A stretch of DNA of 63,845 bases, counting the filler, from Ministeria vibrans ATCC 50519 (Eukaryota > Protista > Filasterea), in NCBI GenBank assembly GCA_943704425.1. It is 6 parts of 6 records of this genome, joined end to end, with 100 filler letters (N's around TTAATTAATTAA, not from the genome) between each part and the next. Parts side by side here need not be neighbours in the genome. Positions count along the whole stretch, not along the records: positions 1 to 30,846 come from CALSCP010002840.1; 5 more parts are not named here. The stretch is one strand, 5' to 3'. Shown here one piece after another: positions 2,214 through 30,000 of this stretch. The number at the start of each line of letters is the position of its first letter. Position 1 is the first letter of the stretch. Made by a program: the position numbers and the translations under genes. The notes beneath the pieces are model-generated. The model saw nothing but the letters and a program-made list of their open reading frames with translations, did no database searches and was not told where the DNA came from.

Positions 2214-2291
2214 ATTTGACAAATGAAAATTGAAATGTTCAATCACTGTTCAATCAGATGAATGATCAATAATTTGATTCTTCTTTTCTAA
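2214..2291. promoter_or_regulatory. Probable bidirectional promoter between HIS7 and the lipase gene
   Basis: Only 78 bp of AT-rich sequence with repeated TCAAT/ATCAAT separate the two divergent ATGs. Inferred from geometry only. Confidence 0.45.
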
Positions 2292-5117
<2,826 letters not shown>

Positions 5118-9241: not shown

Positions 9242-12200
9242 ATGAAGCTTCTTCTTGTCGTAACTGCTGTTGTTATGGCAGTGACAGGGTCAGCCGTCTC
9301 GCATGGCTTCCGACCAGGTCACGTCTACAGCTACCAGTACGCAATTGCAGTGCGTTTCCTTTCCAAACCCCCAAACTCGCACCAGCGCGTCTCTGCCGCC
9401 CCGCTGCGTCCTCCGCTGACCGCCCCCCGCGCTCTATCGTAGGTATTCAAGCCAGGTAGTCCAGTCGCGGTCTCCGCGCGACGCCCCTCACACTGGTTTG
9501 AAGGTAGCGACACAAAAACACATATATCGCACTCGTCGCAAACTGGCGCTACACTCCTTCCGACCCGCCCTGCCAGTGTCCATACCCCGCAACATCCCTC
9601 ACGGACACTACTGACACACACCGCCTTCCGCATTCACCCGTCTACGATTCATCTGTGATCTTATCTTTGTGTGTTTTCTTCTTCTTCGTCCTCCAGCTTG
9701 CGTGCAACACGCACTTCTTTGTCCGTGGCGTCCATGACACACCCGATTCCATTGCCTCTGATGATCCCGAGCTCATTATCGCGCTCAAGGTAGTATTTCA
9801 GCCGTTTTGGACATGGCTATTTTTGTCGCGTCCTTTTTCCCAATGAGTGAACTACTCCAGAGACACCGTAGAGACGCCATTGCGTGCCGGCAGTCTATGT
9901 ACCAATTCATTCATTTGATATATCGCCGCGATACCCAACTCTGTGCGCTCTTATTCCTCAAGGAAGTTTATTGACTCTTTGTTTTTGTCCTCTCTCGTCG
10001 CTCGTCATAACTCCCGCACGTCACCTCGCGTCCAACTGCACTTTCGCCCATCCCACTTAAACCTCTACACCTGTACCCTGTGCAAATGTCCCGTTGCGCC
10101 ACAGCGACGCCGTATGTGTGTATGTCCAAATGCGTTTTTCGCAATACCAAATATGATCGTAACTTGCACTGCGCATTTCTTTCCCCGTCCTTCAACCTCT
10201 CTCTCGCGTCCTCATCCAAATACCAATGTCATCTACGCATCGTATGATACCCTTCAGTCGCTTCGTTGCCGCTTGAAAACCTTTTTTCGCTTAACCGTTT
10301 TTTTCTTTTTCTCCTTCCTCAATTCCTCTCCCTAGATTGATCAAGTCAAAGTCTCGTCGCCTGTCGAGGGCACCATGTACCCACCCGCGGTCACGGAGGA
10401 GTACGCCAAGGGACTCACCCAGGATGTGTTCCACTTTACGCTTCAGGGCGGGCGGGTGCGCCAGGTGTGGGCTGCGGCAGACGAGGCAGTGTGGGCGACC
10501 AACATCAAGCGCGGCATTGTGTCGTCGCTTCAGCTTGAAACGCCTGCTCTCCTTGAGAATGGCCACTCCTTTGCCTCGGACGAGACCGACACAACCGGCA
10601 CCTGTCCCACCGACCACACGGTGCACCGCGACGATGCCACTGACGCCACCGCCTCGGAACACTTTGTCGTCGAGAAGACAAAGGACCTGGCGGCCTGTCG
10701 CAACCGTCGCGTCACTCACGGGCATGCCGCGCGTCCCGAGCGCGACGAGCCGATGCGTGAGGCGCTCTCGTCAACCTACAAGGGCCGCTACCACTTCCAC
10801 ACCGAGTCGGGCCAGCTCAAGCGCGCTTCCATTGTCGAGACGCACTTTTACGATCCGTACGGTTCGCTTGCGAGCGAAAAGGTCCATGCACACGCCCAAG
10901 CGCAACTCACCTTCATCAAGGCGCGTGCTCTTGCCTCGTCCAAGCGTTCGCAAGCCTCCAAGAACAAGCACACGAGCGTGCGCTCCGTCATCGACGACAC
11001 CGTCGCCGAGGATCGTCGCATCGCGCACACGCGTACGTCCCTCCACGTCGAGGACTGGCACGACACCACCGTCAGCGACGAAGCCAAACTGGACTTGCAG
11101 CGTCGTACGCTGCCCGAACAAAAGCGCCGCCTCACTTCCGAGGAACGTACCACACTCCTGCCGCGTCTCCTTGCCAATGTGCAGTTGGTGCACGCCAACC
11201 CGCGCGGCGAACTCTCCGTCTTCCTCGCCTCCGTCACCATCCTCAAGGAGCACCCGCGCCTCATGTTTCACCTGCGTGATCTCTACTTTAAGCCGGACGG
11301 TCTCTTTGTCGACATCATCATCAACATGCTCGTGGCAACCGGCACCGACGAGGGCTTCGACGACGTCGTCGACTCCGTCGTCGACATTCCCGCCTTCAAC
11401 AACACCCACCGCAACCACTTTCTCCTTGCCGTTGGTCTTCTCGACGAGCCCACCCCACACATGTTTGACACTATTATGCGTCTCGTCCGCTCCAACAAGG
11501 TCCGCTCCGGTCGATACTTCGAAGTGGGCGTCAACGCTCTCTTGGCCCTAGGCAACATGATCCGCCGTCACTCGGCCAGCGTCTCGCCTACCGCCCCTCA
11601 AGCAAGCTTTATCAAGGACGCCGCCGGAATTCTCCTGACGGGTCTTGCTGAGGCGACCCTCATGAAGAACTCTGACACAGAACTGCTCTACGTGCACGCC
11701 CTGGGCAACGCAGGCATCGGTGCTGCCGCTCCCATGCTCATCGCGCGTGCCCGTGATGCTCGCCATGCCACAATGCGCGAGGCGGCCATCCAGGCTTTTC
11801 GTCACATCGAGCCCGAACACGCTCCCGCTCAACGCGCCGACCTTATCACCCTGGCTCTCTCGCAAGCGCACCCCAAGCGCGACAACGAGCGCATCCTTGC
11901 TCTGCACACCGTTCTCGACACCGCCTCGCACGACGAACTCCGCACCATTGCCTACCACCTGCGCCACGAACGTTGCGAAAACGTCCGCTCCTACGCCTAC
12001 TCGCGTCTTCGCGCCATCTCCATTGACGACCCAGACATGGTACGCCGTCGCGTCACGCGCGATGCCCTTGACGACTTTGTCTCCGCCGGTGGCATCTGGG
12101 ACACCTCCCAGAGTAACCTTGAGCAGTTTGTCTTCACTCTGGGCTTCAGCCACAACCTTGAGTACTTCCTGGTGGGCGGCGACAAGTGGGGCATTTCTGT

Positions 12201-15200
12201 CGGTTGGGACCTTCTCGACACGGCCACCGTTACTCTGCAGTTTGCCGGCTCGCTTCGTCTGAATGCCGTCGTGCAGAATCGTCTCTTTGCCAATGCGTAT
12301 GCGTTTAGTCGCAGATTCCGTCTTCTGGATGTCGGCTTCAAGATCAACGGTCTCGACTGGGGCACGCGTCTTTGGAGCAGCCGCCGTCGTCAGGTCGAAG
12401 AATACGATGGTACTCAATTGGCGATGCCAAATGTGCCTGCGGCTCGCAGCGCAGTCAAGGCCTTTGAGGCACTTCAGGAGGCAAACCATTTTGGCGCGAC
12501 TCAGTATGAACGAGCAGTGGAAGAAATTGCACGTGCCGGTGACCAGCCCAACTTCTCGTCGTACTCCCCCTTTGGCGGAAAGAACAAGAGTCCACAAGAG
12601 AGTGGCGAATCTACACGTCTTGAATCGGAACCCGAAATGGAGCAGGCACATTCTCGCTCTCGACGTGGCGCCGGAGTACACGCAGTAAGTCAAGGGAGCT
12701 TGTTTTGTTTGTTTGTTGTTTTTTTCGACTCCTACTACAATAATAATATATTATTATTAATATATTTGAACTTTGTTCTCTCGGTTAGGGCGGTCGATGG
12801 GAAAATGGCATTGTGTACTACCATGTCAACGACAATGTGGACCTTGACATTCACTGGGCAAACATACAGGCAGGCATGGACTGGTACGAAGCGAATACGT
12901 GCATTCGCTTCTACCCCCGCACGACACAGGGCAACTTTGTCGAGTTCAAGGCAGATGAGGATGCTGACGTGTGCTCTTCAACTCTGGGCACTGTTGGTGG
13001 TGGTTTGGGCTTACAGACGGTTACACTGACGTCGCCCAGCACATGCTCCGTCAGTACAATGATCCACGAGCTCGACCATACCATCGGCACTCATCACGAG
13101 CAAACGCGCACTGGTTAGTGAAAATTTGTTTATTATAATTATTATAATATTAATATTTTATTGTGTGTGTACATGAGTTGCTCATGTGGTTTATGTGGTG
13201 CTAATGCACCCTGTATGGGGTGTGTGTGGTACTATTGTGCTCTGAATGTGGTGGTGGTGTGTATTGCAAATGTTTTGTTAATGGGCTCGATGTATGTTTG
13301 TGTGGGCCGTTTCACTTTGATTTTACTCACCACCGGCTTAGATCGCGACGACTTTATCACGGTGCTCTGGGACAACATTGCCGATGACAAAAAACACAAC
13401 TACCGCAAGTGGAACAGGTTTGGCGCAGCTGGTCATAACCACGGTCCCTACGATTACATTTCCAATATGCACTACTCTCGCTTTCAAGCATCCCAGCAAG
13501 TCTTCAGTACCCCTAACGCGTACGAATGATCATGGTTTTTCTATCAATAATTATTATTGATTCATTATTGATCATTATTTCTTTTATACATTTTATGATA
13601 ATTCAGATCCCAACCACTGGGAGGTAATGTCATGACCGCTGGAGACGTCGCTCATATTAGCTTTATGTACGACGAAAGCGGCATCTGCATTGATCCCCCC
13701 AACCGTTGCAACTACATCGTAAGATATCTTTACTCTATTTGCGTCTTGCCTTCCTCTCCCTCGTCGCCTTATCCACCTTTTTTAGGCGGTTCACGGCGAC
13801 ACGCTGTTCTCCATCAAGAGTGTTCTTAACGACAAGTTTGGCATGGCCATCACCGAGGAGGAGATCATCGAGCGCAACAAGGACACATTCCCCCTCATCG
13901 CATCTCTTCAGGCACTACTATTTGCGTTGGCCTTGCAAACGCCTAACACTTTCTATGTGTAGTTTGTGACTGCTGGATGGGAACTGGAGGTGTGCGACGA
14001 AGGTGGCACTCTAGAGTTTAAGCACAAGATCGAGGACGCTTTCAATCACCCTCACGTCGACATGGTCGACACCAACGAATTCCGTCTCAAGCTTGGCAAG
14101 GCGCCCTTTGAGAATGTTACCATCACCATTTCGACCACCAATAACATCCTCCACTACCCCGACTACTTCTACGGACCCATTGTGTTTAACGATCGCAACT
14201 GGAACATCTGGCAACTCATCAAGATGAATGTCACTGGCTCGGGCGCTGACACCCTCTCAATCACCGGTGTTGGCGGTGGCTTTGACGCTGCCCCCGCCTT
14301 GGAGATTCAGTTCCATGGAAGTGTCCCAGGTATCAATTACAGATTACAGATAGAAAAAAACAAAGAAGTTTATCACTCACACTGCGGCTTCTCCCCCTCC
14401 CTCCCTTTTTTATTTTTTATTTTGTCTTTCAGGCACTTGCGCTCCGTCTATTGACAATCCTCTTGACAATGTGAACCCACCCGATCCGGGCTCCAACAGC
14501 TCCATTGCATGCGAGTGTGCCAATGGCCTGGACTTCCAGTGCAGCGTCAAGTTCTGCTCCGTGTCCATTGGTCACTGTTCTCTCATCAACGGTCTTCCCA
14601 ACAGTGGTCATATTGGATCTCCCGTTGATGGACGTACGGTGACAACTCACATTGATGATGATGATTATTTTATTGTCATTTTTATTAACTTATTATTATT
14701 ACACTCATTTTTTTTTTTTTTTTGCTTAGCTGACTATTGGGAAACCTGCTCGGTGCCGGCACCCTCGTTGCCACAGTCGTGCACAGACTTTTGGAACACG
14801 ATTGATTGGATTCCCAATGGAATGCGAATCAATATGATCCATCAGTGTGAGGCTGTGCTTCCCGTTGGCGTCGATCCCGCCATTGAGAACATGTACAACT
14901 GTATTGAGAGCGAGTTGCGCTCTAAGATGGTCGATACCAGCATCTTCAGTGGTGCATACAGGGCCAGTATGCGTGCCGCCAAGCTTGCGGCACCCGAGTT
15001 TGACATTGAGGCGAGCGAGGCGTACTGGGCGTCGCTTTTACCCTCCGGCAGCCTCGACCTCTCAACCAAGCTCATCGATATCTTCGACAAGGCTTACGGC
15101 ACCTGCTGTTGTGCTCAGACGCCCGGTCAGTACGTCGGTTGGCTCACGTCGTTGCCCCGCGAGGTGCCCCCTGAGCTGGTCAACTTCAACAAAATCATCC

Positions 15201-17458
15201 ACGGTGTCTGTGAGGAGCGCACCGCTCTCAACGACAGGCCTGTCGATCTTGCCGGCTATGTCTACGCCAACTTTGTCGGTGGCATTTATTCATACTGCTA
15301 CAACATCTTTGGCACCTACTGCGACACAGGTTTTGACAAGAGCGACCCTCTTGGCATTGGTGAGCGTCGTCGCTCGACGACCATGTCACCCTCGGGCCAG
15401 GCTGCTCATGCTGCCGCCACCTCCATGACGCCCTTGTCACAACTGCCAAAGGTTGACACGGATCTCGTGTCGCCCGCCGGACGTCACATCAAGGAATTGT
15501 ACCAGTCGGAGAATGTCAAGGTGATGGCTCGTCGCAGTCTCATTGATTGGATTGACGAGTCGGGTCAGGTTTTTGAGTGTTGGTCTCCCGACCCCGTCCC
15601 TCACATTGCCAAGCTTGAGTTTCCCTTCTTTTCCTTTACCATTCCCATTCCAATCTTCATTGGAATCTCGCTCGATCTCACTGTGAGCGCGGGTGCCTTC
15701 CTGGCCTTTGCGGCCACCGCCGAGACCTGCCCCACTTCCATCGAGGCCACCATCAAGGTGGGTCCGGAGGCCGGTGTCGAAGTCGTTGCCAGTGCCTCGA
15801 TCAATCTGTTCCTCATCAAGGGCGGCGTCCGTCTCAACCTGCGTCTTTTTGACACAAACCTCTGGGTGAACCTGCACGTGTCTATGGCCGCTCGTCCCCT
15901 CTCAACGTGTCTCTCACTCACTTGGGAGTGCGAGGCACTCGGCGGCGAAGTTGAAGTGTTTGTGCAGATCCGCAACAAGATCAAATGGTGCAAGGTGTGG
16001 GGCGTCAAGCTCCCCTGTGGTCTCACTTGGGGCTCCGAACTCAGCGTTCCCATTCCGGGCACCAGCTTTAGTGTGGATGCGTTTGACGGAGAACGCGAGC
16101 TCTGGTCTAATTGCGAAGAGAACGGCAACTTTTTGCCAGGTACACTTATCAAAACAATCGTAATTATTAATGTGTTAATAATAATAATTATTATTATTAT
16201 TATTATTATCATTATTATTATTATTAATTAATTTTTATTTATTTATTTTTAAAATGTTTCCTTCTCTGCTTGTTTGTAGAGGTCCAAACTACGTCACTGC
16301 CGCTGACGCACGAGGATATATCTGAATCAGGAGTGTTTGCCTATGTGGATTCGAACTCGGACAGCGTCATCTGGCGTGTGCACGCCAACCCTAAGGGCAA
16401 GCTTTCTCTTCTCAATCCGTCCACTGGATACTTCCGCTACAAGCCGTCTATCCACTTCTCGGGACAGGACAAGTTTTACATGATTGCGTACGACGGTCAG
16501 GAGGACGGTCCACCCCAGGAGATTACTGTTGACGTCGAGGGTATTCCGGATGCGCCGCGCGTCGAGGTCGAGCCCGCTGTGGGCGTTGAGGGAAACCCTG
16601 CGCGCTTTGTGGTCAACTGGGACATGGTCGACCGCGACGAGTCTGAACTACTTGCTTTTGCCATCTGTAATTGCCGCGAGGAGAACGACACGGACCATGA
16701 TGAGTGGGGTGACGCCTGTGACAACTGTCCCTTTGTTTACAATCCGACACAGGGCGACATTGACGGTGATGGCATTGGCGACGCATGTGATAGCTGCAAC
16801 TTTACGTGCACTCCCCCGAAGAATGGCGTATGCTGTGCGCGTCTCAACGAGACCAGCTACCTCTATCCGCTCTTTCCCGATCCCCACTTCTGCTTCAGCG
16901 ACTACAGCGCTGAAAAGTGCGAAGACCTCGAGACGGTGCATGCTGGTCACTTTATTGTGCTGCAGTTCCACGAGGGCAAGCAGTGCGACGAGGTCGACTG
17001 TGGCGTGCCTCACGATGCCCAGTGTCAGGTGTCCGCCGACGGTCTTGGCTGTACGGTGTGTCCCGACAAGGACAAGGCCGAGCGTGTCTTTACGCTGTTG
17101 TCGCTTATCGACAAGATCAAAAGCAAGGGTAGGCGCATTGTCGCCCTGCGCGACTCCATCGTCGCACTTGAAACCGAGCGTACACGCCTTGATATCCGTC
17201 GTGCCGCCGCCGTCGAGCAACTGGCCAACGCGGACGCTAACCCTTTCTTCCCGCCCAGCGACCTTGCCGACTTCAAGCAGGACCTCGCCGATCTCATCGT
17301 GGACCTGGAAAAGTCCATTCGCACACGCGAGGCGGACATTATCACACTTCAAGAGGAACTCGATCAGTGTGAAAAGGATCTCAAAGGATACCTGTCTGAT
17401 TTTGTCAACGTAAGGCACCAATGCACACTTTACCATTATAATTATTATTATAATTATA

Positions 17459-17506
<48 letters not shown>

Positions 17507-20500: not shown

Positions 20501-23500
20501 GAAATGATCAACGATGTGGACGCCTTTGAAGGTGATCTTGTGGTGACGGTGGCGAGCAAATCGGGCCGTGGTCGGGTCTGGCTTAATGGCCAAGCACCCT
20601 CGACGGTGCATGTGTACCACATTGGCGAGGCGCTGCACATTGACGATGAAGTCTTTGGAGAGCAGGTGGTATTCGACGACGTGTCGACTTTCAGTGCACA
20701 CGACGAAATCCAAGGCATTCCTGTTGATGGCAACGGCGGTCAGTACCTGCGAATTCGTGGCTCGCTCGTCGACGTCAATGAAACCATGCAAATGGGTTTC
20801 CGCTACGAGGCGCTGCCCGGTCCCGCCGGCAATGACACCCTCATGATGTCCATTGACGACACCTTCTTCTCGCTGTTGCCGCGTGGTGCGCGTGGCTACG
20901 TCTCGACGTCCTTCCCCATTACCATCACGGCGAGTGCCGCTACAAACACACCGCCTGCCTGGACCTGGTCCAACGGCCTTGTCTTTGTGGCATCGCATTC
21001 TACTGTCGCGCTGACGGGGCTTTCGGTGGTCGAGACGGACGGTGATGCTCTCACTGTGCACGTCAACGTCACTGCTAACGCGCCCGTTCAGTCCATATCG
21101 CTTTCCAACGCCTCGTTTACGTCGTCCACCAGCCTGGTGCTTGAGTGTTCCAATGCGACTGCTTGCAACAGTGCACTGGCCCAGTTTAGTGTGACACTGT
21201 CCTCAGAAGCGTCGTGCCCCGTCTTTGTGCACCTCTCTGTCAGCGAAGGATCCGCCGCCCCAGTCACGCTTGTTGTTATCGTCCAACCACAACAGTTGCC
21301 AGCGCTATTGGCAGCAAGCACCATGGCTGCATCGTCGTCGTCGTCATCATCTTCTTTGCCGTGCAACAGCACTGCACCCGTGTGCGGTGCGACGGAAACC
21401 CGCTCAGACATTGTGCACGCTGAGGATCTCACCCACCATGTGTCGTGCCCCGCCGTCTATTCGGGCGCGTGCCCCTGCTGGTTTGGCAAGCGTCTCGTGT
21501 TCAACGCACAAAAGGTGTACGCCAACGGCTCGGAGTACTCGGGCGCGACCGGTCAGGCACTCTTTGACGGCGGTCTGCTGTTCTTCTCGGGCAATGTGAA
21601 CAACGACAACCCTAACCGATGGGATGCCTTTCACATGACGGTGTATTGCAACGCGAGCAGTTCATCGCTGTCGTCGGTCGCCGCCGACCTGTACCAGCAC
21701 ACGTCTTCGTCGAGTGGCACGCCGCGCATGAAGGCACTCTTCACGCGCTCCGGACCCAAATGTATGCTTTTGTCGCTGCGCACCGACTCTGCGAATGGCA
21801 CGGAGTGCTCTCTGCCGACGACCATGGATGACTCGAACGAGGTTCAGCACTATCTGCTGTGCACTGAGGATGCAGACTCGACGCTGTCGACGTGCACGGA
21901 CGGCGATGTGACGCAGGCGGTGTACCCGTCGACTGACGTGGCATCGCCCATGAATGTGTGTCCGCAGACGCACATTGGTACATGCCCGTGCTGGATGAGC
22001 GACAATGTACCGCAGACCATGGAGCTGTTGTATGCCAACGGCACAGTGATTCCCGACCGCAAGTCATTTGTCAAGTTTACCGGTCGCATTGCGATTGTGT
22101 CAGGCGGACTGGACACGACCAATGCAGGAAACCAACTGACGCTGATGTTCACGACGCAGTGCAACACCAACGACTCGACGGCAACCACGGTGGAAGGAAC
22201 GTTTGATTTTCGTTTGACGAGCAATCCGGAGATTTCGGCTTCGCGTTTGCCGTTTGTGGTGACTCGGAGTGCGGCGGACATTGCGGACGACTGCTTCACA
22301 CTGAACCTGCGTATTGATACGGGCAATGACACGGTCAACAACTGCACTGTGCCCGAGACTGTGCCATTGAGCGGCGCGCCTGTGCCCGCTGCCAATGGTG
22401 GCTCTGCTTTCCTTTTTGGTCGTATCTGTCGCAATCGTGCGCCGTGCAATTTTGTTCCGCCTTGCAACGACACCCCTGCACCCGTGTGCGGTGCGACGGA
22501 AACCCGCTCAGACATTGTGCACGCTGAGGATCTCACCCACCATGTGTCGTGCCCCGCCGTCTATTCGGGCGCGTGCCCCTGCTGGTTTGGCAAGCGTCTC
22601 GTGTTCAACGCACAAAAGGTGTACGCCAACGGCTCGGAGTACTCGGGCGCGACCGGTCAGGCACTCTTTGACGGCGGTCTGCTGTTCTTCTCGGGCAATG
22701 TGAACAACGACAACCCTAACCGATGGGATGCCTTTCACATGACGGTGTATTGCAACGCGAGCAGTTCATCGCTGTCGTCGGTCGCCGCCGACCTGTACCA
22801 GCACACGTCTTCGTCGAGTGGCACGCCGCGCATGAAGGCACTCTTCACGCGCTCCGGACCCAAATGTATGCTTTTGTCGCTGCGCACCGACTCTGCGAAT
22901 GGCACGGAGTGCTCTCTGCCGACGACCATGGATGACTCGAACGAGGTTCAGCACTATCTGCTGTGCACTGAGGATGCAGACTCGACGCTGTCGACGTGCA
23001 CGGACGGCGATGTGACGCAGGCGGTGTACCCGTCGACTGACGTGGCATCGCCCATGAATGTGTGTCCGCAGACGCACATTGGTACATGCCCGTGCTGGAT
23101 GAGCGACAATGTACCGCAGACCATGGAGCTGTTGTATGCCAACGGCACAGTGATTCCCGACCGCAAGTCATTTGTCAAGTTTACCGGTCGCATTGCGATT
23201 GTGTCAGGCGGACTGGACACGACCAATGCAGGAAACCAACTGACGCTGATGTTCACGACGCAGTGCAACACCAACGACTCGACGGCAACCACGGTGGAAG
23301 GAACGTTTGATTTTCGTTTGACGAGCAATCCGGAGATTTCGGCTTCGCGTTTGCCGTTTGTGGTGACTCGGAGTGCGGCGGACATTGCGGACGACTGCTT
23401 CACACTGAACCTGCGTATTGATACGGGCAATGACACGGTCAACAACTGCACTGTGCCCGAGACTGTGCCATTGAGCGGCGCGCCTGTGCCCGCTGCCAAT

Positions 23501-26500
23501 GGTGGCTCTGCTTTCCTTTTTGGTCGTATCTGCNNNNNNNNNNNNNNNNNNNNNNNNNNNNNNNNNNNNNNNNNNNNNNNNNNNNNNNNNNNNNNNNNNN
23601 NNNNNNNNNNNNNNNNNNNNNNNNNNNNNNNACGGGCAATGACACGGTCAACAACTGCACTGTGCCCGAGACTGTGCCATTGAGCGGCGCGCCTGTGCCC
23701 GCTGCCAATGGTGGCTCTGCTTTCCTTTTTGGTCGTATCTGCCGTGCGTCGTCGAAATGCCCAAACACGACAACCGCAGCACCGGCTGTGCCTTTGCCTC
23801 CTAGTGCGCCCGAGCCTTGCTTGCCCTGCTACAGCGCATCTACCAGCGAGCCGTGCACCCCATGTTGTGCCACGACTAACGCAACGATGCTGTCGGGCAC
23901 TACCAACACGGCTGAGGATACGGCGGTGAATGTGACGCTCGCCTTTGCCAATCCGACTGCGTCTCTCGCCGACGTGTACACTGTGCACATTACTTGTCCC
24001 GATGGTGCCATGACACTTCTGGCTGATGCTACCGCTGCCGGTATAAGTGTGGAGCGCCAACAAGCCTGGCCACTGGTTGGCACTGCGAACCTTGCCACGG
24101 ACACTGTCCTGCGCGGCCCCGTCTCGGGTCTAGTGACCGTCCTGAACAGGGTCATGTACACACCCGCGCGCGACGTTGCCGGCATCACGCGTCTCAAGTT
24201 TGACTTTTACGGCGCCAGTGAAGATCTCTCGGCGGCCGCACAGCTGTACGACTATGCTCATTTGGAGCATCGCCTGTGGGTGTCGCCCGTCTCGGATCCA
24301 CCGCGTCTGGAGATACCTGGCATCGTTTTTGTGGACGAAACTACCGAGACACAGTTGTGGGCACTGATGGCGGCGGACGTGGACGACAACGCGGAGGAAC
24401 AAATTGATCTGCTCACCGTCACTGTCACGTCGGTGCGCAACACATTCCACATCAACAAGCCGACTTACTTGGCGATTGCGTTTACCGTGGGCGACGGTAC
24501 CTCGGCTTCCACCATGACGTTCCTGGCGCGTCCCGAGGGCGCAACTGCAGCTCTCAACGAGATTTACTACGAGGCGGGTGGCTGCGTGCAAGAGGGCTGC
24601 TCGTCGGGTGTCGACGAGCTGGCCATCACCCTGACCGACCAGGCCGGCCTGACGGTCACCAAGAAAATTTTTATTGACGTGGTGTGTAAGGCTGAGCCGC
24701 CGCTGCTTGTCACGGACGACGTGACGGGCGACGAGGACACCAACATTACGCTTTCGGCGGCACAAGTGACGCTGCGCGATCCTGAAGAGTTCCTCACGGT
24801 GTTCCTTACGCCGCAGGAAGGCTCAGCACCGTTTTCATTGACACACGGCACTTTGCAAGGGATTACCTGGCAGGTGCTGCCGTCGGATTTGAACGCGGGC
24901 GTTATCAATGTGATCCTCGAGGAGGACAACCATGACAACATTGTGTTTGATGTTGTCGCCTACACACTTGAGCCGTCCAATGGTCGTGTCGCACGGAACA
25001 CCAGCACGTTCACCGTCAACGTACTTCCCGTAAATGACCCGCCCCAGGTGATCATGCCAGCGCAGCAGAAGGGCAAGGAGGATATTTGGTTTGCGCTCGA
25101 TCCCATTCTATTCTATGACATTGACGTCCCCAGCGGCACTGGCTACAACTTTCGAGCAGAACTCTCGGTAAATGACGGCACGCTCAGCTACTACAACCAT
25201 TCGACACCCATGTGCACGTCTGGTCTCACTTGCACCGGCCTCTACACCTCGTCGGTGAGCTTTGAGGGGCCGCACGAAGCCGTCAATGGCATGCTTGGGC
25301 GTATCTTTTACAAGTCGGACCACAACTGGAATGGCATCGATGTTCTCTCGTGCACCATTCGCGACATGGGCTCGGTTGGCTCGGGTCCCGTTGGAGTCGC
25401 CGTGGGCACGGTCAAGGTGACGGTGGAGCCGGTCAACGACGCGCCCTACTTTTCAGTGACGCTTGTACCTGCGCAAAATGGTCTTTGCTTGCCCGACTAC
25501 GGCAACAAAACCTGCTTGCCGCGCATCCATGATTTCAGTCCGTACGAGGATCACCCAGTGGCGCTGCCCGTGTCCAACCCGATTCAACTGGACGATGTTG
25601 ACTCCAAGCCGACCGACTTCATTTATTTGCGTATCAGCGCAGGCCGTGGCAGTCTGTCAATGCCTGCGATTTCATCCACGACGCTCACCTTTACAACGGG
25701 CGACGGCACTGACGATCAGCTCATTGTGCTCAATGGCACCCTCAGCGAAATTCAGACCCTGCTTTCGCTTCTGACGTATACGCCGCTTGCCGACATGAAC
25801 GGCGACGATTACATCGAAGTGTATGCGCGCGACGGTCCCTCAGACGGCACACAGCCCATGGACACGTCACACCAGGAGGGCGTGTACGGCTTCTACGTGC
25901 ATCCCGTCAACGACCCACCCTTCGTCTCCATGACCATGACGCCGACCATGGTGCGTCCAGGACAGCTCTCGATTGGCTCCGTATCCATTTTCGACGATGC
26001 CACCGAGGAACTGTCGAATAACGACGTGATCCGCGTGACACTCAAGGTGTTCAATGGACTCATTCGCATCTCGCATGTGAACGCACCCGTCTCCATTGTG
26101 TCTGGCTCGCAGAACAGTGCCAGCGTGACGATTCAGGGTCCGCTGGACTCGGTCGTGTCCGACCTCCAGTCAATTGAGTACCGTCCCGACGCCTTCCTCG
26201 ATGGCTCCGACTTTGATCACAGTGTCGACTCGCTCGTGGTGACCGTCGACGACCTGGGCCACTTTGGTGGTTGTCCGTCTCCACTGTCGCAAACGCCGTG
26301 TAACCAGAGGACGCGCCAGAACCATACGATTATTGTGGAGGAGTGCACGGGCACTCTCTCGTGGACCACCTTTCCCGTGGGCACCGGTTCAATTGACGGT
26401 CAGGACACTTGGAACTACGCCGACCTACCACCCAACTTTTTTGATGAGTTTGACGCGGATGGCGATGTGGTGCTGGCCGAGGACGAGACGACGCTTGTCT

Positions 26501-29345
26501 TTGATGAGCCGCCGCCGCCCAACCCCACCATCTCATATGAGTCCACTGTTTTCCACGACGTCATCATTCCCGCGACCGATCCGTACGAGACCGAGTACCT
26601 CGTGCCTTTCCGCGTTAATGCCATTACACCGTTTGGCGTGCCGGGCGGCACGATGTGCGCCGAGACGGCTCCCGCCGTAATTGGAGAGGACATCTCGAGT
26701 GTGAGCGACCTGCTTATGCGCACCTCCTTCAACGTGGGCTACGGCGTGATTGGCGTCAATGTGACGGTGCGTGCCAACCAGCCGGTGTATGTGTACTTCA
26801 ACGAAGAGTATTTCGACGTGCACACCCACACAGGTGGCGACTGCAGCACCGAGTCATCCTTTGTTATGCCGTTTTGGTTCGCGCCCGACGGTGCCACCCG
26901 CGAAGACGACACCTTCCGTAACACACTGCATCTGCGTGCGCCACGACGACCCGACTTCATCGAGGCACGTGTGTCCGTGCTGAGCTGCTCGGGTCAGCGG
27001 CCTGACTGCCTCAAGCACAAATGCAGGTCGGACGTGTATGAGACACTGTACTCGACGGCCGGTATTGAAGGTACCACCAACACGGGCATCTGTCCGCGCG
27101 GCTGTGTGTGTGGTGCAAAGGAGATGTGCATTGACAACTCATGCGGCAATGGCATTGTGGAGACATTCAATGGTGAGGAGTGTGACGACGGCAACTTTGT
27201 GAATGACGATGCATGCTCCAACACATGCAAGAAGGGCGTCGATCGCAGCTGCCACATTGAGCAGTACAACACGGACGAGTTGCGTAAGGAGATGGGCAAC
27301 TCGTCGCTGACGGCGGAGCAGCGTGCGCGCATTCAATTGATCATTGACAAGGTGGACGCTGGCACTGCAGTGGGCACGGTCGACGGCTTCGACAAGTATG
27401 GACGCTACTGTGCGGGCGCGTGTCTTGACGACCCCACCCAGCCGCCGTGTCTGGCGCTGTGGACCAACGACGACACGGAGCTCAAGGACTGCGGGTGTGT
27501 GCCGTCGGGCTCGTCGGGCGGCGGCACGGGCTGCCGCATCGAAGTGAACCCCTACTTCCAGTACTCGGGCGACGTCGACTCGACCATTTTTGATCGCAAA
27601 GGCCGCTACTGCACCGGCTCGTGTGCGACGGACGCGACCAAGCAGTGCCTGGCCAAGTGGTCCAACGACAACCAAGACATTACCGCGTGCGACTGCCCGC
27701 CGCAACAGACAGGCTGCCGCGTGAACGATAAGCGCAACGGCTGTGAGGGTGCGTGCCCCGCCGACAAGAGTGAGTACAACCTGTCGCTGCTGTATGGTGG
27801 TCAGCAGCTCAAGCAGTGTCTGCCGCGCTTTGTCACGTACGGCATGGTTCGAGTGCTTAGCCGCTGCGACTGCGGCTCGACTGACACGACAACGGGCTGC
27901 CGTGTGATTACGGACAAGCTGACGGGCGCCAAGTCGTGCGGCGGCGCGTGTCCCACCTCGGGAAACAAGTGCCAGAAGAAGGTATTCCGTGGCTCGACTT
28001 ACTGCGACTGTGTGCCCGACTTTACAACGCCCAAGTATGGTTGCCGTGTGACAGCAGCCGACGAGTGTGTGGGAGTGTGCAAGAACACGTTGTTGCCATG
28101 CAAGGAGGTGCGCCAGGGCGGCAAGATGAAGAGCTGCGGCTGCGGCATCATTGACCTAGGCTGTACGGTCAATTTTGACGCACAGACGCGCACGCCACTG
28201 TCCTGCACGGGCACGTTGACGGGCAGTTCCACGTCATGTGCGGCACTGACACAGACGCCGGTGGGCATAGTCGAGTGTCGTGGAGACGATGCGGCAGTCG
28301 ATCCGGCCAAGGGCTGTTACTTCAATCGGGTGCTCGGCGAGTGTTCGGGTCGTTGCTTTGATTCAAACAATGTGGCGCGTGAGTGTCAGGCGGTCACCAA
28401 GGGCGTCTTCACCATTGGCTGTGTGTGCCCCAAGCCCGAATCGACGAGCATGTCGACCGAGCCGTGTCAGATCATTAACGACAAGTGCGTGACCATTCCT
28501 AACTTGGGCTCGTGCACGGGTTTCACGGCTGGCAAGTTCAAGTGCGACGCCGTGTACAACCGTCTTGGACAGCTGACGGCGTGCAACTGCCCGACGCCCG
28601 CCGAGCGCACCTGCTCGACCACGGACCCCACCAGCTTGTGCTTTATTAAGCCGCAGCAGCAGGGCAGCCTTAAAGGCATTGCGTCGTTGAAGCCATCAAC
28701 GTCTCGTCTGCTGAGCAAGCTCGAGAGTGCTGGCAAGGCTGTCGACAAGGTTGTGAATGTGACCTTCTCACTGGACGTGCCTGTTGATGTGCCCCAGGAC
28801 GTCTCATTTGTGGTGCAGCAGGATGTGTTGCCGTCGTGCGCGACGCTCGCCGATGACACCACCACCGAGTGCACCAACAGCCACTCAGAGGACATTGCAG
28901 ACCCGACTGAGGCGCGCGCTTTTGATCCGCTCACGCTTGCCTTTACGATCACGGCCGTCAACGACTCCGACTCGTCATTCCAGCGCGGCATCTTATTCAC
29001 CTCGCCCTTGGTGGTCTCGGCGTCGGTACCGGCGGCCGAGTGCGACGCTGAGACGCTCTCGTCGGTGCGCCTGTACTACTTCGACGTGGACTGCTTTGGG
29101 GACACTGGGGTTGCAGCCGACTGCTGGAAGGACGCGGGTGCGACGTGTCCGGCGGATCAGGCGATGCATGACGTTACGGGCTGTACGCTCACGGTGCACG
29201 TGTGTCATCTGACGGCCTTTTCGCTGGGGGTGGGCAGCACGACGCTGTCAACGGGCGCGAGCATTGCTATTGTGGCGGGTGCAGCTGCCGCGGCGATTGT
29301 TGTGCTTTTGCTCGTGCTGCTGTTTGTCGTACGTCGTCGTCGATC

Positions 29346-29376
<31 letters not shown>

Positions 29377-30000
29377 GGAGTCAAGGAAGGCCGCGGGAGT
29401 GGTGGGGGGTTGGCTTACTCGCAGGCACACTTGGTGACGCGAGGTGCGCAGGAGTCGAATGACGAGCAGGTGGCGATGCAGGGCAGCAAGTCGATGACGC
29501 AGGTTGAGCTGACGCGGGCGATTGGCGCCGAAATGGGCAGCCAGCCGCCACCCATGCTGCTTGTGGACGACCCCGAGTCGCGTCGTCAGTTTACCAATGA
29601 TGTGGATGATTTCCACTCGTTTGCTGACGACTCACAGTCGTTCAATGATGACTCGCGCTCATTTGCCGACAGCGACATTGGTGTGAGCGAGCAAGAGCGT
29701 GAGCGTCGTCGGAAGGCGCGCATGCAACGCAAGCAGAGCCGTCTGGAGAACATTGACATGCCCAGCTGGTTGTCGGACCAGCTGAGTGCGCGCGAGGTGC
29801 GGCATTCGAAGCGCGGCACCCAACCCGGCGAGGTGGTGTACGACAGAGACGGCAATGCCGTGGAGACATCGGCTCACGGGTCGCACCAGCTGGACGTCGA
29901 GCCAACCGCCGGTGAGCGATTGGGGATGGAGCAGTCCCCTGTGAGTGCGCCAGATGGGAGCAGCGTGAGTGATGGAGTGTTGCCCAAGGGTGCTCTCTGA
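9242..30000 (+). CDS. Giant (~6,200 aa) single-pass membrane protein: signal peptide, LLTP/vitellogenin-N, astacin, LysM, Ig-like, LLTP beta-sheet, cadherin-like repeats, TSP3, Cys-rich repeats, GPS, TM, cytoplasmic tail
   Basis: Exons 9242-9336, 9443-9503, 9697-9789, 10336-12684, 12789-13113, 13342-13519, 13607-13718, 13786-13911, 13963-14329, 14433-14633, 14730-16139, 16280-17409 and 17585-30000 (98-N gap at 23534-23631) all join in phase. Signal peptide [43 protein letters not shown] followed by RRRR. Confidence 0.85.
9305..12360 (+). other. Domain: large lipid transfer protein N-terminal module (beta-barrel, alpha-helical domain, first beta-sheet)
   Basis: [13 protein letters not shown]...TGLKLAC start; [14 protein letters not shown]; [10 protein letters not shown]; LLALGNM; HALGNAG; [11 protein letters not shown]; [22 protein letters not shown]. 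These follow the order of conserved vitellogenin/apoB/MTP motifs. Confidence 0.8.
12789..13672 (+). other. Domain: astacin-family (M12A) zinc metalloprotease, three exons
   Basis: RWENGIVYY; NTCIRF; zinc motif [19 protein letters not shown] (HExxHxxGxxHExxRxDR) across an intron; YDYISNMHY Met-turn. Confidence 0.92.
13704..13995 (+). other. Domain: LysM-like
   Basis: Spliced sequence [57 protein letters not shown] fits the LysM pattern Y.V..GDTL..I...G.....I...N......G..L. Confidence 0.7.
16684..16795 (+). other. Domain: thrombospondin type-3 calcium-binding repeats
   Basis: [35 protein letters not shown]. Confidence 0.88.
21372..23532 (+). repeat. Intragenic tandem duplication, period 1104 bp (368 aa); 21372-22428 matches 22476-23532
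   Basis: Repeated DNA, and ORFs on both strands recur with identical translations offset by exactly 1104. Confidence 0.93.
27142..27230 (+). other. Domain: Myxococcus-type cysteine-rich repeat (DUF4215-like)
   Basis: [29 protein letters not shown]. Confidence 0.85.
29060..29335 (+). other. Domain: GPS-like autoproteolysis motif plus single transmembrane helix
   Basis: LYYFD...CW...C...[15 protein letters not shown] (HL/T at 29206-29214), about 15 aa before the hydrophobic helix. Confidence 0.7.

What the first reader, a model, noticed from the sequence alone, without database searches (positions are those of the whole stretch)
9242..30000. One ~6,200-aa membrane-tethered polyprotein joining a vitellogenin-type lipid carrier, a metalloprotease, a glycan-binding LysM, an adhesin stalk and a GPS release site
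The ORF track shows many separate ORFs, but all 12 introns phase into one frame from a signal peptide to a single TM helix (seen in the sequence). LLTPs (vitellogenin, apoB, MTP) are characterised mainly as soluble animal proteins. This organism has HIS7 and so is probably not an animal. I know of no described protein combining LLTP, astacin, LysM, bacterial-type cadherin repeats, TSP3 and GPS-TM. Inference: a surface-displayed, proteolytically processed machine that binds prey walls, digests protein and captures lipid, or a giant sheddable receptor.
Basis: partly seen in the sequence, partly recalled or inferred. Interest (0 to 1): 0.93.

Follow-up and report, generated by a model that had tools for sequence, protein, structure and literature searches.

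The report
Giant membrane-anchored lipid-carrier–protease surface protein
An unidentified microbial eukaryote encodes one roughly 6,200-residue cell-surface protein whose vitellogenin-type lipid-binding module is interrupted by a metalloprotease and a glycan-binding domain and sits on a very long adhesin-like stalk; no such combination turned up in the papers searched, and its function has not been tested.

Summary
From ATG 9242 to stop 30000, a spliced model of 10 clear introns gives 18,513 nt (6,170 aa), with a signal peptide at the start and one TM helix near the end.

**Assembly gap.** The gap is flanked by an identical 111-nt overlap read in the same codons. It lies at the end of a perfect 1,104-nt (368-aa) tandem duplicate. 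The frame is therefore kept, but the copy number is unknown.

**Domains.**
- Confirmed: Vitellogenin_N (2.5e-42) and astacin with an intact zinc site.
- Supported: LysM and cadherin-like repeats, through relatives.
- Weak: TSP3 and DUF4215, below threshold but with canonical motifs.
- Not supported by any test: the GPS site.

**One gene.** Two independent metagenome contigs carry the same parts in the same order. Their uninterrupted ORFs bridge every junction from E2 to E10.

**New point.** The ~670-aa protease–LysM cassette is inserted inside the lipid-transfer module, and conserved multibasic sites flank it.

**Caveats.**
- Both orthologues lack the catalytic Glu.
- The region 9350-10335 may hide micro-exons.
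- The organism is unknown.
- No transcript data exist.

**Verdict.** This is a new architecture built from known domain families. Its function as a surface capture or adhesion receptor is inferred.

The parts
9242..9349 (+). Exon 1. It holds the start codon, the signal-like peptide [20 protein letters not shown], and the first LLTP strand [14 protein letters not shown].
   Evidence: Translation. A hydropathy window above 1.9 lies at residues 1-3. A local LLTP N-terminal profile hits 9293-9364 at E=1e-3. The donor is GTGCGT at 9350.
9350..10335 (+). Unresolved stretch, modelled as intron 1 (986 nt, GC 0.52). Candidate phase-0 micro-exons lie at 9697-9789 and 10105-10227.
   Evidence: It is unlike the other introns in length and composition. 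Relatives carry about 40 more residues here. The candidates come from splice and phase enumeration. Neither a profile nor tblastn supports them.
10336..12684 (+). Exon 2 (783 aa). It holds the LLT module N-sheet and helical domain and the first beta-sheet segment ([21 protein letters not shown], 12301-12363). A linker then ends in RSRR at 12655-12666.
   Evidence: Pfam Vitellogenin_N, E=2.5e-42, residues 19-559. PDB sequence hits are lipovitellin 1lsh, MTP 6i7s and apoB-100. HMMER hits include LLTPs. The tail is homologous to L001 and L003.
12789..13113 (+). Exon 3: the N-terminal half of astacin. The zinc motif [12 protein letters not shown] lies at 13065-13100.
   Evidence: Pfam Astacin, 4.9e-16, profile positions 1-99. 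The alignment to crayfish astacin 1ast scores 2e-11.
13342..13519 (+). Exon 4: the middle of astacin. It holds (T)DRDDF and the Met-turn SNMHY at 13461-13475.
   Evidence: Pfam Astacin, 4.6e-08, profile positions 101-152. The phase-1 join with exon 3 was worked out.
13607..13718 (+). Exon 5: the C-terminal end of astacin (…[15 protein letters not shown]) and the start of the LysM-like segment.
   Evidence: Translation. It is collinear with L003, whose ORF holds the full Astacin domain (2.6e-25) followed by LysM.
13786..13911 (+). Exon 6: the LysM-like core ([36 protein letters not shown]…). It ends at a GC donor (GCACTA, 13912).
   Evidence: No GT-AG pair keeps the frame here; only GC-AG 13912-13962 does. 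The L003 alignment fits that join to within one residue. LysM scores 21.2 bits against a gathering score of 20.9 in L003. The window's exon alone gives no Pfam hit.
13963..14329 (+). Exon 7: the end of LysM ([10 protein letters not shown]) and a conserved domain of about 110 aa of unknown fold.
   Evidence: It is homologous to L003. Neither Pfam nor PDB sequences give a hit.
14433..14633 (+). Exon 8: a small Cys-rich segment with 6 Cys.
   Evidence: It is homologous in L001 and L003. Cys count.
14730..16139 (+). Exon 9. The N-part (about 186 aa) is family-specific and predicted helical. Next come [10 protein letters not shown] (15293-15322) and the multibasic ERRRS (RRRS at 15365-15376). From about 15290 to 16138 it forms the second beta-sheet part of the LLT module.
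   Evidence: Short LLTPs match this part. MTP_lip_bd scores 4.1e-4 in the L001 orthologue. The AF2 model shows long antiparallel strands, with pLDDT 65-85 over residues 290-450. The top Foldseek hits are MTP 6i7s and lipovitellin 1lsh. A local profile hits more than 30 large LLTPs at residues of about 770-890.
16280..17409 (+). Exon 10. It holds a cadherin-like/Big_9 domain (about 16345-16530), a thrombospondin type-3-like calcium-binding repeat (16687-16791), a Cys-rich stretch and a coiled-coil-like segment.
   Evidence: Big_9 scores 2.9e-3 and TSP_3 scores 1.1e-3; both are below the gathering score. The L001 orthologue scores Big_9 3.1e-10 in one ORF together with the E9 homologue.
17585..23533 (+). 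First part of giant exon 11 (1,983 aa). It holds Cys-rich modules, an S/T-rich linker (from 18575) and Pfam-blank domains. It ends with two 100%-identical 1,104-nt units (21372-22428 and 22476-23532).
   Evidence: Open frame and translation. Pfam is blank. Repeats. It is partly homologous to the giant ORF of L006.
23534..23742 (.). Assembly gap (23534-23631) and a 111-nt duplicate of 23423-23533 (23632-23742). Collapsing the overlap joins the two parts of exon 11 in frame.
23743..29256 (+). Remaining ectodomain of exon 11. It holds bacterial-type cadherin-like repeats (about 23917-26331; xNDxP linkers at 24289, 25030, 25432 and 25906) and a Pfam-blank 270 aa. A DUF4215-type motif (27142-27231) and about 12 Cys-rich modules follow, up to about 28640. 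The juxtamembrane region holds VCHLTAF (CHLTAF at 29203-29220).
   Evidence: the search for homologous proteins returned cadherin-like, VCBS and tandem-95 proteins. Pfam scores are sub-threshold. The region aligns at 29% over 1,676 aa to the L006 ORF, E=5e-148. All GPS tests were negative.
29257..29331 (+). The single transmembrane helix (…[23 protein letters not shown]), followed by RRRR.
   Evidence: It is the only hydropathy segment above 1.9 over 19 aa outside the signal peptide, apart from one borderline strand in E9.
29332..30000 (+). Cytoplasmic tail (222 aa) and the stop codon. It holds a poly-Q run, three acidic SF(A/N)D repeats and a basic stretch.
   Evidence: Translation.

Best explanation
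**What it is.**
- It is one gene for a type I membrane glycoprotein of about 6,200 aa.
- The membrane-distal head is a large-lipid-transfer (LLT, vitellogenin/MTP-type) module.
- An insertion of about 670 aa splits that module between its first and second beta-sheet segments. The insertion carries an astacin zinc protease, a LysM glycan-binding domain and three family-specific segments.
- Behind the head lies a stalk of about 4,400 aa. It holds a cadherin-like domain with a thrombospondin-3-type calcium site, coiled coil, Cys-rich modules, a mucin-like linker, an expandable 368-aa repeat, and at least five bacterial-type cadherin-like repeats.
- One TM helix and a 222-aa cytoplasmic tail follow.

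**How it most likely works (inferred).**
- The protein enters the secretory pathway through its signal peptide.
- A furin/kexin-type convertase cuts at the conserved multibasic sites that flank the cassette. These are RSRR about 10 residues before the astacin N-terminus, and ERRRS before the second LLT sheet.
- The first cut frees the astacin N-terminus, which is the known way astacins are activated.
- The LLT halves stay associated, as in cleaved apolipophorin II/I.
- The head then works at the cell surface as a combined binding unit for lipid (LLT cavity) and for GlcNAc-type glycans (LysM). In this organism it also carries a live protease.
- The stalk holds it far from the membrane, for capturing particles or prey or for adhesion. 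The tail links to intracellular traffic.

**Shown versus inferred.**
- Shown: the anatomy, its conservation, and the intact catalytic motifs.
- Inferred: cleavage, lipid and glycan binding, and the biological role.
For: - **Frame.** The exon chain is in frame, with a signal peptide and one TM.
- **LLT and astacin.** Vitellogenin_N scores 2.5e-42. Astacin scores 4.9e-16 and 4.6e-08 with an intact HExxHxxGxxHE and SxMHY.
- **Orthologues.** Contigs L003 and L001/L006 are collinear over E2-E11b.
  - The uninterrupted 1,438-aa ORF of L003 holds the LLT tail, Astacin (2.6e-25), LysM (21.2 bits) and the E7-E9 homologues.
  - ORF 6234-8312 of L001 spans E9 and E10.
  - The 2,913-aa ORF of L006 aligns with E11b residues 96-1654, E=5e-148.
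- **Split LLT module.**
  - Short LLTPs, including those of Amoeboaphelidium, match both E2 and E9.
  - MTP_lip_bd appears in the orthologue.
  - The top Foldseek hits are MTP and lipovitellin.
  - An E9C profile hits more than 30 large LLTPs at residues of about 770-890.
- **Multibasic sites.**
  - They are conserved in all three sequences.
  - The insertion point coincides with the loop where 4 of 21 large LLTPs carry RX[KR]R.
  - ApoLp-II/I and apolipocrustacein are cut by furin in that loop at about aa 725 (PMC1783640).
- **No skipping.** Leaving out E3-E8 (1,309 nt) would break the frame.
Against: - No transcript or protein data exist.
- Junctions E1|E2 and E10|E11 are not bridged by an orthologous ORF.
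- The region 9350-10335 may hide exons.
- One intron needs a GC donor.
- In both orthologues the astacin has lost the catalytic Glu (HMIGH, HKLGH) and the Met-turn Tyr (SIMHP). Proteolysis is therefore not a conserved function of the family.
- In the window, LysM, TSP3, DUF4215 and the cadherin-like families are all below Pfam thresholds.
- The E9 structural match has low TM-scores (0.13-0.16), and the model's mean pLDDT is 47.
- More than half of the protein has no recognisable family.
- Convertase cleavage and ligand binding are untested.
Confidence: 0.6

Rival explanations
1. The protein is an extracellular-matrix or cell-coat building protein, not a capture receptor. The LLT module would act as a clotting or cross-linking and pattern-binding unit, as in crustacean clotting protein and vitellogenin. 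The astacin would act like BMP-1/tolloid in maturing matrix components. The stalk would be a structural fibre of a wall, cyst or coat.
For: - The domain set is the same as in the best explanation.
- RSRR sits about 10 residues before the astacin start. From my own knowledge, this resembles the furin site of BMP-1.
- Immune, agglutinin and clotting roles of LLTPs are mentioned in PMC1783640.
- The stalk is Cys-rich and has an S/T-rich linker and 39 N-glycosylation sequons.
- The 368-aa repeat is expandable, as in structural proteins.
Against: A TM helix and a 222-aa tail with acidic repeat motifs suggest a trafficked receptor, not a deposited fibre. No collagen-like or other matrix substrate domain lies nearby. 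The astacin is inactive in the orthologues.
Confidence: 0.2
2. The protein is a sheddable receptor with a GPS/GAIN-type autoproteolytic site next to the membrane. The whole ectodomain would be released or held non-covalently after cleavage at HL|T.
For: The peptide [10 protein letters not shown] lies about 15 residues before the only TM helix. By rough estimate, HL[ST]xF preceded by Cys so close to the TM is unlikely by chance, but it was noticed post hoc.
Against: - Pfam GPS gives no hit even at E<=10.
- PDB sequences give no match.
- A region-restricted search found no homologue.
- The canonical CxCxHLT spacing is not met; the sequence here is C-x6-C-HLT.
- At the equivalent place the orthologue L006 has SYHILL, not HLT, and shows no significant similarity.
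- The AF2 model is unusable, with pLDDT 35.
Confidence: 0.1
3. The locus holds two or more separate genes, for example a secreted LLTP-astacin-LysM protein and a separate giant adhesin. Alternatively, it is an assembly chimera, and the single frame is coincidental.
For: There are no transcript data. E10|E11 and E1|E2 are unbridged. An assembly gap and a perfect duplicate lie inside the giant exon. The cadherin-like and DUF4215 parts look bacterial.
Against: - Ten introns all keep phase over 18.5 kb.
- E11 opens directly at an acceptor, with no Met or signal peptide of its own.
- The same order of parts occurs on independent contigs from other samples.
- Exon GC is uniform at 0.49-0.60.
- The gap is flanked by an in-frame 111-nt overlap.
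Confidence: 0.07

Closest known systems
Large lipid transfer proteins (vitellogenin, apolipophorin II/I, apolipocrustacein, apoB, MTP)
   Same: - It has an N-terminal signal peptide and a Vitellogenin_N module.
- It has a second beta-sheet part homologous to the C-terminal lipid-binding region of MTP-sized LLTPs. That part corresponds to residues of about 770-890 in large LLTPs.
- A multibasic convertase-type site lies in the same loop where apoLp-II/I and apoCr are cut.
   Different: - It is membrane-anchored through a C-terminal TM helix.
- The LLT module is interrupted by a cassette of about 670 aa holding astacin and LysM.
- No DUF1081 or von Willebrand D domain is present.
- About 4,400 aa of adhesin-like stalk follow.
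- Identity to any named LLTP is 30% or less.
- It comes from an unidentified, probably unicellular, eukaryote.
Short LLTPs of 815-917 aa from microbial eukaryotes (e.g. Amoeboaphelidium protococcarum KAI3645415; unnamed metagenome ORFs P0050, P0131, P0134)
   Same: They are the closest named relatives of both halves of the LLT module. Both the E2-like part and the E9C-like part are present, including the W..C.D.FG..C motif.
   Different: In them the two halves are only about 15-20 residues apart. They have no astacin, LysM, stalk or TM.
Astacin family M12A (astacin, BMP-1/tolloid, meprins; LysM-astacins of animals)
   Same: - The catalytic domain carries HExxHxxGxxHE, RxDRD, the SxMHY Met-turn and four Cys in the usual places.
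- A multibasic site precedes the mature N-terminus.
- A LysM-astacin combination is listed for a tardigrade in PMC9848320.
   Different: - The 'prodomain' position is taken by an 800-aa LLT module.
- The domain is embedded in another module rather than N-terminal.
- The words vitellogenin and lipoprotein do not occur in that survey of more than 25,000 astacins.
- The orthologues are pseudo-proteases.
Bacterial cadherin-like / tandem-95 / VCBS giant adhesins (Pfam Cadherin_4, Cadherin_5, Big_9)
   Same: E11b residues of about 450-890 match these repeats at about 26% identity. Per-domain E-values reach 1e-24. The xNDxP linker motifs are also shared.
   Different: Here the repeats are part of a spliced eukaryotic gene with a signal peptide, a TM and a cytoplasmic tail. 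No type I secretion signal or RTX repeats are present.
Adhesion-GPCR / polycystin-type GAIN-GPS proteins
   Same: It has a giant mosaic ectodomain and an HLT-containing peptide just before a TM helix.
   Different: There is one TM, not 7 or 11. No GPS or GAIN profile, sequence or structural match was found, and the motif is absent in the orthologue.

Membership tests
LLTP superfamily | N-terminal LLT module: beta-barrel and helical domain (Pfam Vitellogenin_N / LPD-N). | tested here: met
   E=2.5e-42, 145.7 bits against a cutoff of 24, profile positions 72-590. PDB sequence hits are 1lsh, 6i7s and 9bd1.
LLTP superfamily | Beta-sheets that complete the lipid cavity (C/A sheets; MTP_lip_bd or DUF1943 region) after the helical domain. 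| tested here: met
   - The window itself gives no Pfam hit.
- E9 residues 187-469 are homologous to the C-terminus of short LLTPs.
- The orthologue hits MTP_lip_bd at 4.1e-4, below the gathering score.
- The top Foldseek hits are 6i7s (5e-5) and 1lsh, but with low TM-scores.
- A local profile hits more than 30 large LLTPs at residues 770-890.
- The part is present but displaced by an insertion of about 670 aa.
LLTP superfamily | Binds and transfers lipid. | not testable with these tools
   This needs expression of the head domain and lipid-binding or transfer assays.
LLTP superfamily | Secretory signal peptide. | tested here: met
   [20 protein letters not shown] has hydropathy above 1.9. No dedicated signal-peptide predictor was available.
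Astacin (MEROPS M12A) | Zinc-binding consensus HExxHxxGxxHE. | tested here: met
   [12 protein letters not shown] lies at 13065-13100 and aligns to astacin 1ast.
Astacin (MEROPS M12A) | Met-turn SxMHY, whose Tyr is a zinc ligand. | tested here: met
   SNMHY lies at 13461-13475 within the Pfam match to profile positions 101-152. Both orthologues have SIMHP and HM/KxxH, so they do not meet this feature.
Astacin (MEROPS M12A) | N-terminal pro-segment removed for activation. | tested here: inconclusive
   A conserved multibasic site lies 8-10 residues before the RWxNGI start in all three sequences. No recognisable aspartate-switch motif is conserved. Cleavage is untested.
LysM domain | Match to the LysM profile (about 44-aa beta-alpha-alpha-beta). 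| tested here: inconclusive
   - In the window the segment is split over exons 5-7, and exon 6 alone gives no hit.
- The joined sequence was deliberately not searched.
- The orthologous uninterrupted ORF of L003 scores 21.2 bits (gathering score 20.9) over profile positions 1-27 of 43.
- The window aligns to that segment.
Bacterial-type cadherin-like repeats (Cadherin_4/5, Big_9) | Profile match above the gathering score. | tested here: not met
   - Best scores in the window are Cadherin_4 at 22.8 bits (gathering score 25.1) and Big_9 at 17-19 bits (gathering score 23.6).
- Homology is nevertheless clear through proteins that carry these domains.
- It is also clear through the L001 orthologue, with Big_9 at 41.2 bits.
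Thrombospondin type 3 repeat | TSP_3 profile match; DxDxDGxxDxCDxCP…DxDxDGxGDxCD calcium-binding motif. | tested here: inconclusive
   The score is 19.1 bits against a gathering score of 25. The motif at 16687-16791 looks canonical by eye. It was not seen in the orthologue.
GPS / GAIN autoproteolysis domain | GPS profile match, with the CxCxHL(T/S)xF spacing, inside a GAIN beta-sandwich next to the first TM. | tested here: not met
   - Pfam gives no hit at E<=10.
- PDB sequences give no match.
- The region search found no homologue.
- The Cys spacing deviates from the canonical pattern.
- HLT is absent in the orthologue.
GPS / GAIN autoproteolysis domain | GAIN fold. | tested here: inconclusive
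   The single-sequence AF2 model has pLDDT 35 and is not usable for a fold search.

The most novel reading that the evidence does not exclude
A lineage of microbial eukaryotes outside the described animal LLTPs displays a lipid-transfer module on the cell surface. A protease and a glycan-binding domain are built into the loop that other LLTPs use for convertase cleavage. This would be a membrane-anchored 'capture head' that recognises cell-wall glycan, cuts protein and extracts lipid from prey or particles. It would point to extracellular lipid harvesting as an ancient LLTP function, before or apart from yolk and lipoprotein transport.
Probability: 0.2. Interest if true: 0.85.

Novelty: new variant of a known kind. 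Interest (0 to 1): 0.62.

Why it matters
- **LLTP biology.** LLTPs are treated in the literature as soluble or ER-luminal animal proteins for yolk and lipoprotein formation. Here the LLT module is membrane-tethered, split by an astacin-LysM cassette, and conserved in at least two further uncultured organisms. That widens what this fold is used for.
- **A testable handle.** It gives a concrete way into the pre-animal or non-animal history of lipid carriers.
- **Domain insertion.** The insertion sits at a known convertase loop, which is a clean natural example of a domain inserted into a processing site.
- **Enzyme decay.** The active-versus-dead astacin contrast between relatives is a ready-made comparison for how an enzyme domain becomes a structural one.
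- **Annotation.** Prokaryote-style gene calling has shredded these loci into anonymous 'hypothetical proteins'. The family is therefore invisible in current databases.

Tried and rejected
- **Whole giant exons against Pfam.** The result was almost blank. Sub-pieces gave only sub-threshold cadherin-like and DUF4215 hits.
- **GPS.** All of these were negative or unusable:
  - Pfam at E<=10.
  - PDB sequence search.
  - Region-restricted homologue search.
  - Single-sequence AF2, pLDDT 35.
  - A metagenome scan with the C-terminal 483 aa, which found no relatives.
- **Second metagenome scan.** I used the Cys-rich alignment A3. It returned only DUF4215-type repeats in unrelated contigs and no orthologues.
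- **Organism identity.** The HIS7 exon's best named hits are only 52-58% identical and are spread over chytrids, Mucoromycota, Monosiga, Capsaspora and gamma-proteobacteria. The organism is unresolved.
- **Hidden exons in 9350-10335.** Splice and phase enumeration gave candidates. An LLTP N-terminal profile and tblastn with the orthologues' N-termini did not support them.
- **PDB sequence searches.** E7, the 368-aa unit and the cadherin-like block found nothing.
- **Tandem Repeats Finder.** It missed the 1,104-nt unit because the period exceeds 500. The repeat finder and a script found it.
- **Literature.** One search was badly framed and uninformative.
- I did not search the joined spliced protein.
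- **Rejected readings.**
  - A bacterial contaminant or chimera. The GC content is uniform, the introns stay in phase, and the orthologues are collinear.
  - In-frame skipping of the astacin cassette. Its 1,309 nt are not a multiple of 3.

Full report
**1. Assembly gap, tested first**

The N run at 23534-23631 is flanked by the same sequence on both sides. The 111 nt at 23423-23533 are identical to 23632-23742. The long open frame is frame 2 before the gap and frame 1 after it. In those frames the duplicate reads as the same peptide (…[37 protein letters not shown]).

The gap lies at the end of the second copy of a 1,104-nt (368-aa) tandem unit. Its two copies (21372-22428 and 22476-23532) are 100% identical. 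The simplest reading is two contig ends that overlap by 111 nt. More copies could also be hidden in the gap. Because 1,104 is a multiple of 3, every such case keeps the frame. Continuity in frame is therefore well supported, and only the length is uncertain. In the orthologue L006 the equivalent stretch is only about 182 aa, so this part of the protein varies in length between relatives.

**2. Gene model**

Splice sites were worked out from the DNA.

| Exon | Coordinates | Note |
|---|---|---|
| E1 | 9242-9349 | start codon, signal peptide |
| E2 | 10336-12684 | |
| E3 | 12789-13113 | |
| E4 | 13342-13519 | |
| E5 | 13607-13718 | |
| E6 | 13786-13911 | ends at a GC donor |
| E7 | 13963-14329 | |
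| E8 | 14433-14633 | |
| E9 | 14730-16139 | |
| E10 | 16280-17409 | |
| E11 | 17585-30000 | contains the gap |

- With the 111-nt overlap collapsed, the model totals 18,513 nt, which is 6,170 codons and a stop, all in phase.
- Nine of the ten introns are 51-228 nt long with GC 0.12-0.45, against exon GC of 0.49-0.60. Several contain (ATT)n runs.
- The E6|E7 intron has no in-phase GT-AG solution. Only GC-AG (13912-13962) works.
- The orthologous uninterrupted ORF of L003 supports that join. The window reads FPLIASLQ|[11 protein letters not shown] and L003 reads YPSLASNPDLIQPAWVLQFC.
- 'Intron 1' (9350-10335; 986 nt; GC 0.52) is atypical. LLTP relatives have about 40 more residues between the YxYxY strand and the start of E2.
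- Phase-0 candidate micro-exons exist at 9697-9789 and 10105-10227.
- Neither a profile of LLTP N-termini nor the orthologues' N-termini support those candidates. I leave them open.
All database work was exon by exon, by reference.

**3. Topology**

The N-terminus ([20 protein letters not shown]) is signal-like. The only other TM-grade hydrophobic segment is at 29257-29331 and is followed by RRRR. A 222-aa tail follows, with a poly-Q run and three acidic SF(A/N)D repeats. E11 opens directly at its acceptor and has no Met or signal peptide of its own.

**4. Domains**

- **LLT module.** Vitellogenin_N scores E=2.5e-42 in E2. PDB sequence matches are lipovitellin, MTP and apoB-100.
- **Astacin.**
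  - It spans E3-E5. Profile positions 1-99 score 4.9e-16 and positions 101-152 score 4.6e-08. It aligns to crayfish astacin at 2e-11.
  - [12 protein letters not shown], (T)DRDDF and SNMHY are intact.
- **LysM.** It is split over E5-E7 and is not detectable in the separate exons. In L003 the collinear segment scores 21.2 bits, just above the gathering score.
- **E10.** It has Big_9 (2.9e-3) and TSP_3 (1.1e-3), both below threshold. The peptide [35 protein letters not shown] is a textbook type-3 calcium-binding repeat by eye.
- **E11b cadherin-like repeats.**
  - Residues of about 450-890 match bacterial cadherin-like, VCBS and tandem-95 proteins (E down to 1e-103 overall; per-domain to 1e-24; about 26% identity).
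  - The Pfam families themselves stay below threshold in the window.
- **DUF4215.** The motif at 27142-27231 scores 22 bits against a gathering score of 27. It is 60-75% identical to many metagenome contigs carrying that Cys-rich repeat.
- **No family assigned.** About half of the protein has none. This covers E7, E8, the N-part of E9, most of E11a including the 368-aa unit, and E11b residues 900-1170.
- **GPS.**
  - The peptide [10 protein letters not shown] lies about 15 residues before the TM. Every test failed: Pfam, PDB sequences, region search and AF2, with pLDDT 35.
  - The orthologue has SYHILL and shows no significant similarity.
  - I treat GPS as unsupported, not disproved.

**5. 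Evidence that this is one gene**

An HMMER search of 1.84 billion representatives with E2 found no close relative; the best hit is 29% identical. One hit was a 233-aa fragment (P0046) that joins the LLT tail to astacin in one ORF. Its contigs and those of the top hit gave orthologous loci:

- L001/L006, from ENA ERZ27317262, 18,285 nt.
- L002 and L007, from SRR8861906.
- L003, from SRR27445058, 6,741 nt.

tblastn shows the window's exons in the same order on them: E2, E3, (E7), E8, E9, E10, E11a, E11b.

- L003 has one uninterrupted 1,438-aa ORF. It runs from the LLT tail through a full astacin domain (2.6e-25) and LysM into the E7-E9 homologues.
- In L001 a 692-aa ORF spans E9 and E10.
- In L006 a 2,913-aa ORF aligns with E11b residues 96-1654 at 29% identity (E=5e-148).

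Every junction from E2 to E10 is therefore bridged by a continuous ORF in a relative. Only E1|E2 and E10|E11 rest on splice logic and collinearity. Skipping the astacin cassette (E3-E8, 1,309 nt) would break the frame.

**6.

- MTP-sized LLTPs of 815-917 aa, including four *Amoeboaphelidium protococcarum* proteins, match E2. About 15-20 residues later they match E9 from its W/YxxCxxxFGxxC motif onward.
- The L001 orthologue of that part hits Pfam MTP_lip_bd (4.1e-4, below threshold).
- An AF2 model of E9 built on six sequences is poor overall (pLDDT 47). Residues 290-450 score 65-85 and form long antiparallel strands.
- Its top three Foldseek hits among 350,000 PDB chains are MTP 6i7s (5e-5 and 2e-4) and lipovitellin 1lsh (1e-2). 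TM-scores are low, at 0.13-0.16.
- A local profile of this part hits more than 30 large, mostly animal, LLTPs at residues of about 770-890.

Together these show that E9 residues 187-469 are the next beta-sheet segment of the LLT module. About 670 residues are an insertion into one loop of the module. The insertion comprises the E2 tail, astacin, LysM, E7, E8 and the N-part of E9.

The insertion is flanked by multibasic sites conserved in all three sequences:

| Sequence | Site before the astacin start | Site before the second sheet |
|---|---|---|
| Window | RSRR\|GAGVHAGGRWENG | ERRRS |
| L001 | RAKR\|SVVHERYRWANG | RRRRA |
| L003 | KSRR\|NIVHTRYRWPNG | RRHRRS |

The loop is the one in which 4 of 21 large LLTPs in my hit set carry RX[KR]R. 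In that loop, furin cuts apolipophorin II/I and apolipocrustacein at about residue 725, between motifs N19 and N20 (PMC1783640).

**7. A caution for function**

Both orthologues have lost the catalytic Glu (HMIGH in L003, HKLGH in L001) and the Met-turn Tyr (SIMHP). The astacin looks active in this organism but is a pseudo-enzyme in its relatives. Proteolysis cannot be the conserved core function of the family.

**8. Mechanism (inferred)**

- The protein is a secreted, type I anchored glycoprotein.
- Convertase cleavage at the flanking sites would free the astacin N-terminus. From general knowledge of astacins, this is needed for activation, and BMP-1 uses a similar RSRR site.
- The cut would leave the LLT halves associated, as in apoLp-II/I.
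- The head would combine a lipid cavity, a GlcNAc-glycan binder and, here, a protease, on a calcium-stiffened, Cys-rich stalk of about 4,400 aa.
- The tail's acidic repeats may serve trafficking.
- I favour a surface capture or adhesion receptor. A matrix or coat-building role is the main rival.
- Separate genes or a chimera are unlikely.

**9. Comparison and novelty**

- The literature library returned no LLTP-astacin fusion and treats LLTPs as animal proteins.
- A survey of more than 25,000 astacins lists a LysM-astacin in a tardigrade. It never mentions vitellogenin or lipoprotein (PMC9848320).
- All parts belong to known families.
- Three things are new: the membrane anchoring of an LLTP, the protease-LysM cassette inside the LLT module, and the combination with a bacterial-type cadherin-like stalk.
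- The relatives exist only as unannotated fragments.
- I therefore rate this a new variant of a known kind.

**10. Surroundings and organism**

- On the same piece lie a fused hisH/hisF (HIS7-type) gene on the minus strand (444-2246), a DUF3336 patatin-type gene (2362-2856, + strand) and an MFS sugar transporter (7260-8162, minus strand).
- The best named HIS7 relatives are only 52-58% identical. They are spread over early fungi, Monosiga, Capsaspora and gamma-proteobacteria.
- The organism is a eukaryote of unknown position, and 'not an animal' is likely but unproven.
- Nothing here looked human, and no step had to be referred.

Noticed in passing
window 444-2246 (- strand), 2362-2856 (+), 7260-8162 (-): The neighbouring genes are a fused glutamine amidotransferase/cyclase (HIS7-type hisHF), a DUF3336 domain typical of patatin-like lipases, and an MFS sugar transporter. 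HIS7's best named relatives are only 52-58% identical and taxonomically scattered. The organism stays unidentified.
   Followed up: partly
window 21372-22428 and 22476-23532: Two 1,104-nt units are 100% identical, lie in tandem and sit directly beside the assembly gap. Each encodes 368 aa made of two sub-domains of about 184 aa, with no Pfam or PDB match. The orthologue L006 has only about 182 aa at this place.
   Followed up: partly
L003:2426-6739 and L001:3315-5013: In both orthologous contigs the astacin zinc motif reads HMIGH or HKLGH, so the catalytic Glu is lost. The Met-turn reads SIMHP, so the Tyr is lost. The domain is therefore a pseudo-protease there, while the window's copy is intact.
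   Followed up: yes
window 13912-13962: This 51-nt intron can only be spliced in frame with a GC donor (GCACTA…GTGTAG). The join is supported by the orthologue alignment.
   Followed up: yes
window 9350-10335: This stretch is modelled as intron 1 but is 986 nt long with GC 0.52, unlike all other introns. Candidate micro-exons lie at 9697-9789 and 10105-10227. The latter ends …CTAHFF, which resembles RAHLF and KPHVF in the orthologues.
   Followed up: partly
window 16187-16239, 17435-17543, 30114-30147: (ATT)n microsatellites lie inside two introns and in the 3' flank. These two introns are extremely AT-rich (GC 0.12-0.14), against exon GC of 0.49-0.60.
   Followed up: no
window 29332-29997: The cytoplasmic tail has a run of nine Gln right after the RRRR stop-transfer signal. 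It also has three acidic repeats, [24 protein letters not shown]. These may be sorting or phosphorylation motifs.
   Followed up: no
P0043 / P0283 (metagenome contigs of about 14 kb); P0059 (2,675 aa): Other giant LLTPs are encoded as single uninterrupted ORFs on metagenome contigs. This suggests further unannotated LLTP diversity in intron-poor microbial eukaryotes.
   Followed up: no
L008-L071 (JGI/ENA metagenome contigs): The DUF4215-type motif CGNG…EECDDGN…DACSNTC of the window (27142-27231) is 53-75% identical to repeats on 64 unrelated contigs. The rest of the Cys-rich region has no match there.
   Followed up: no
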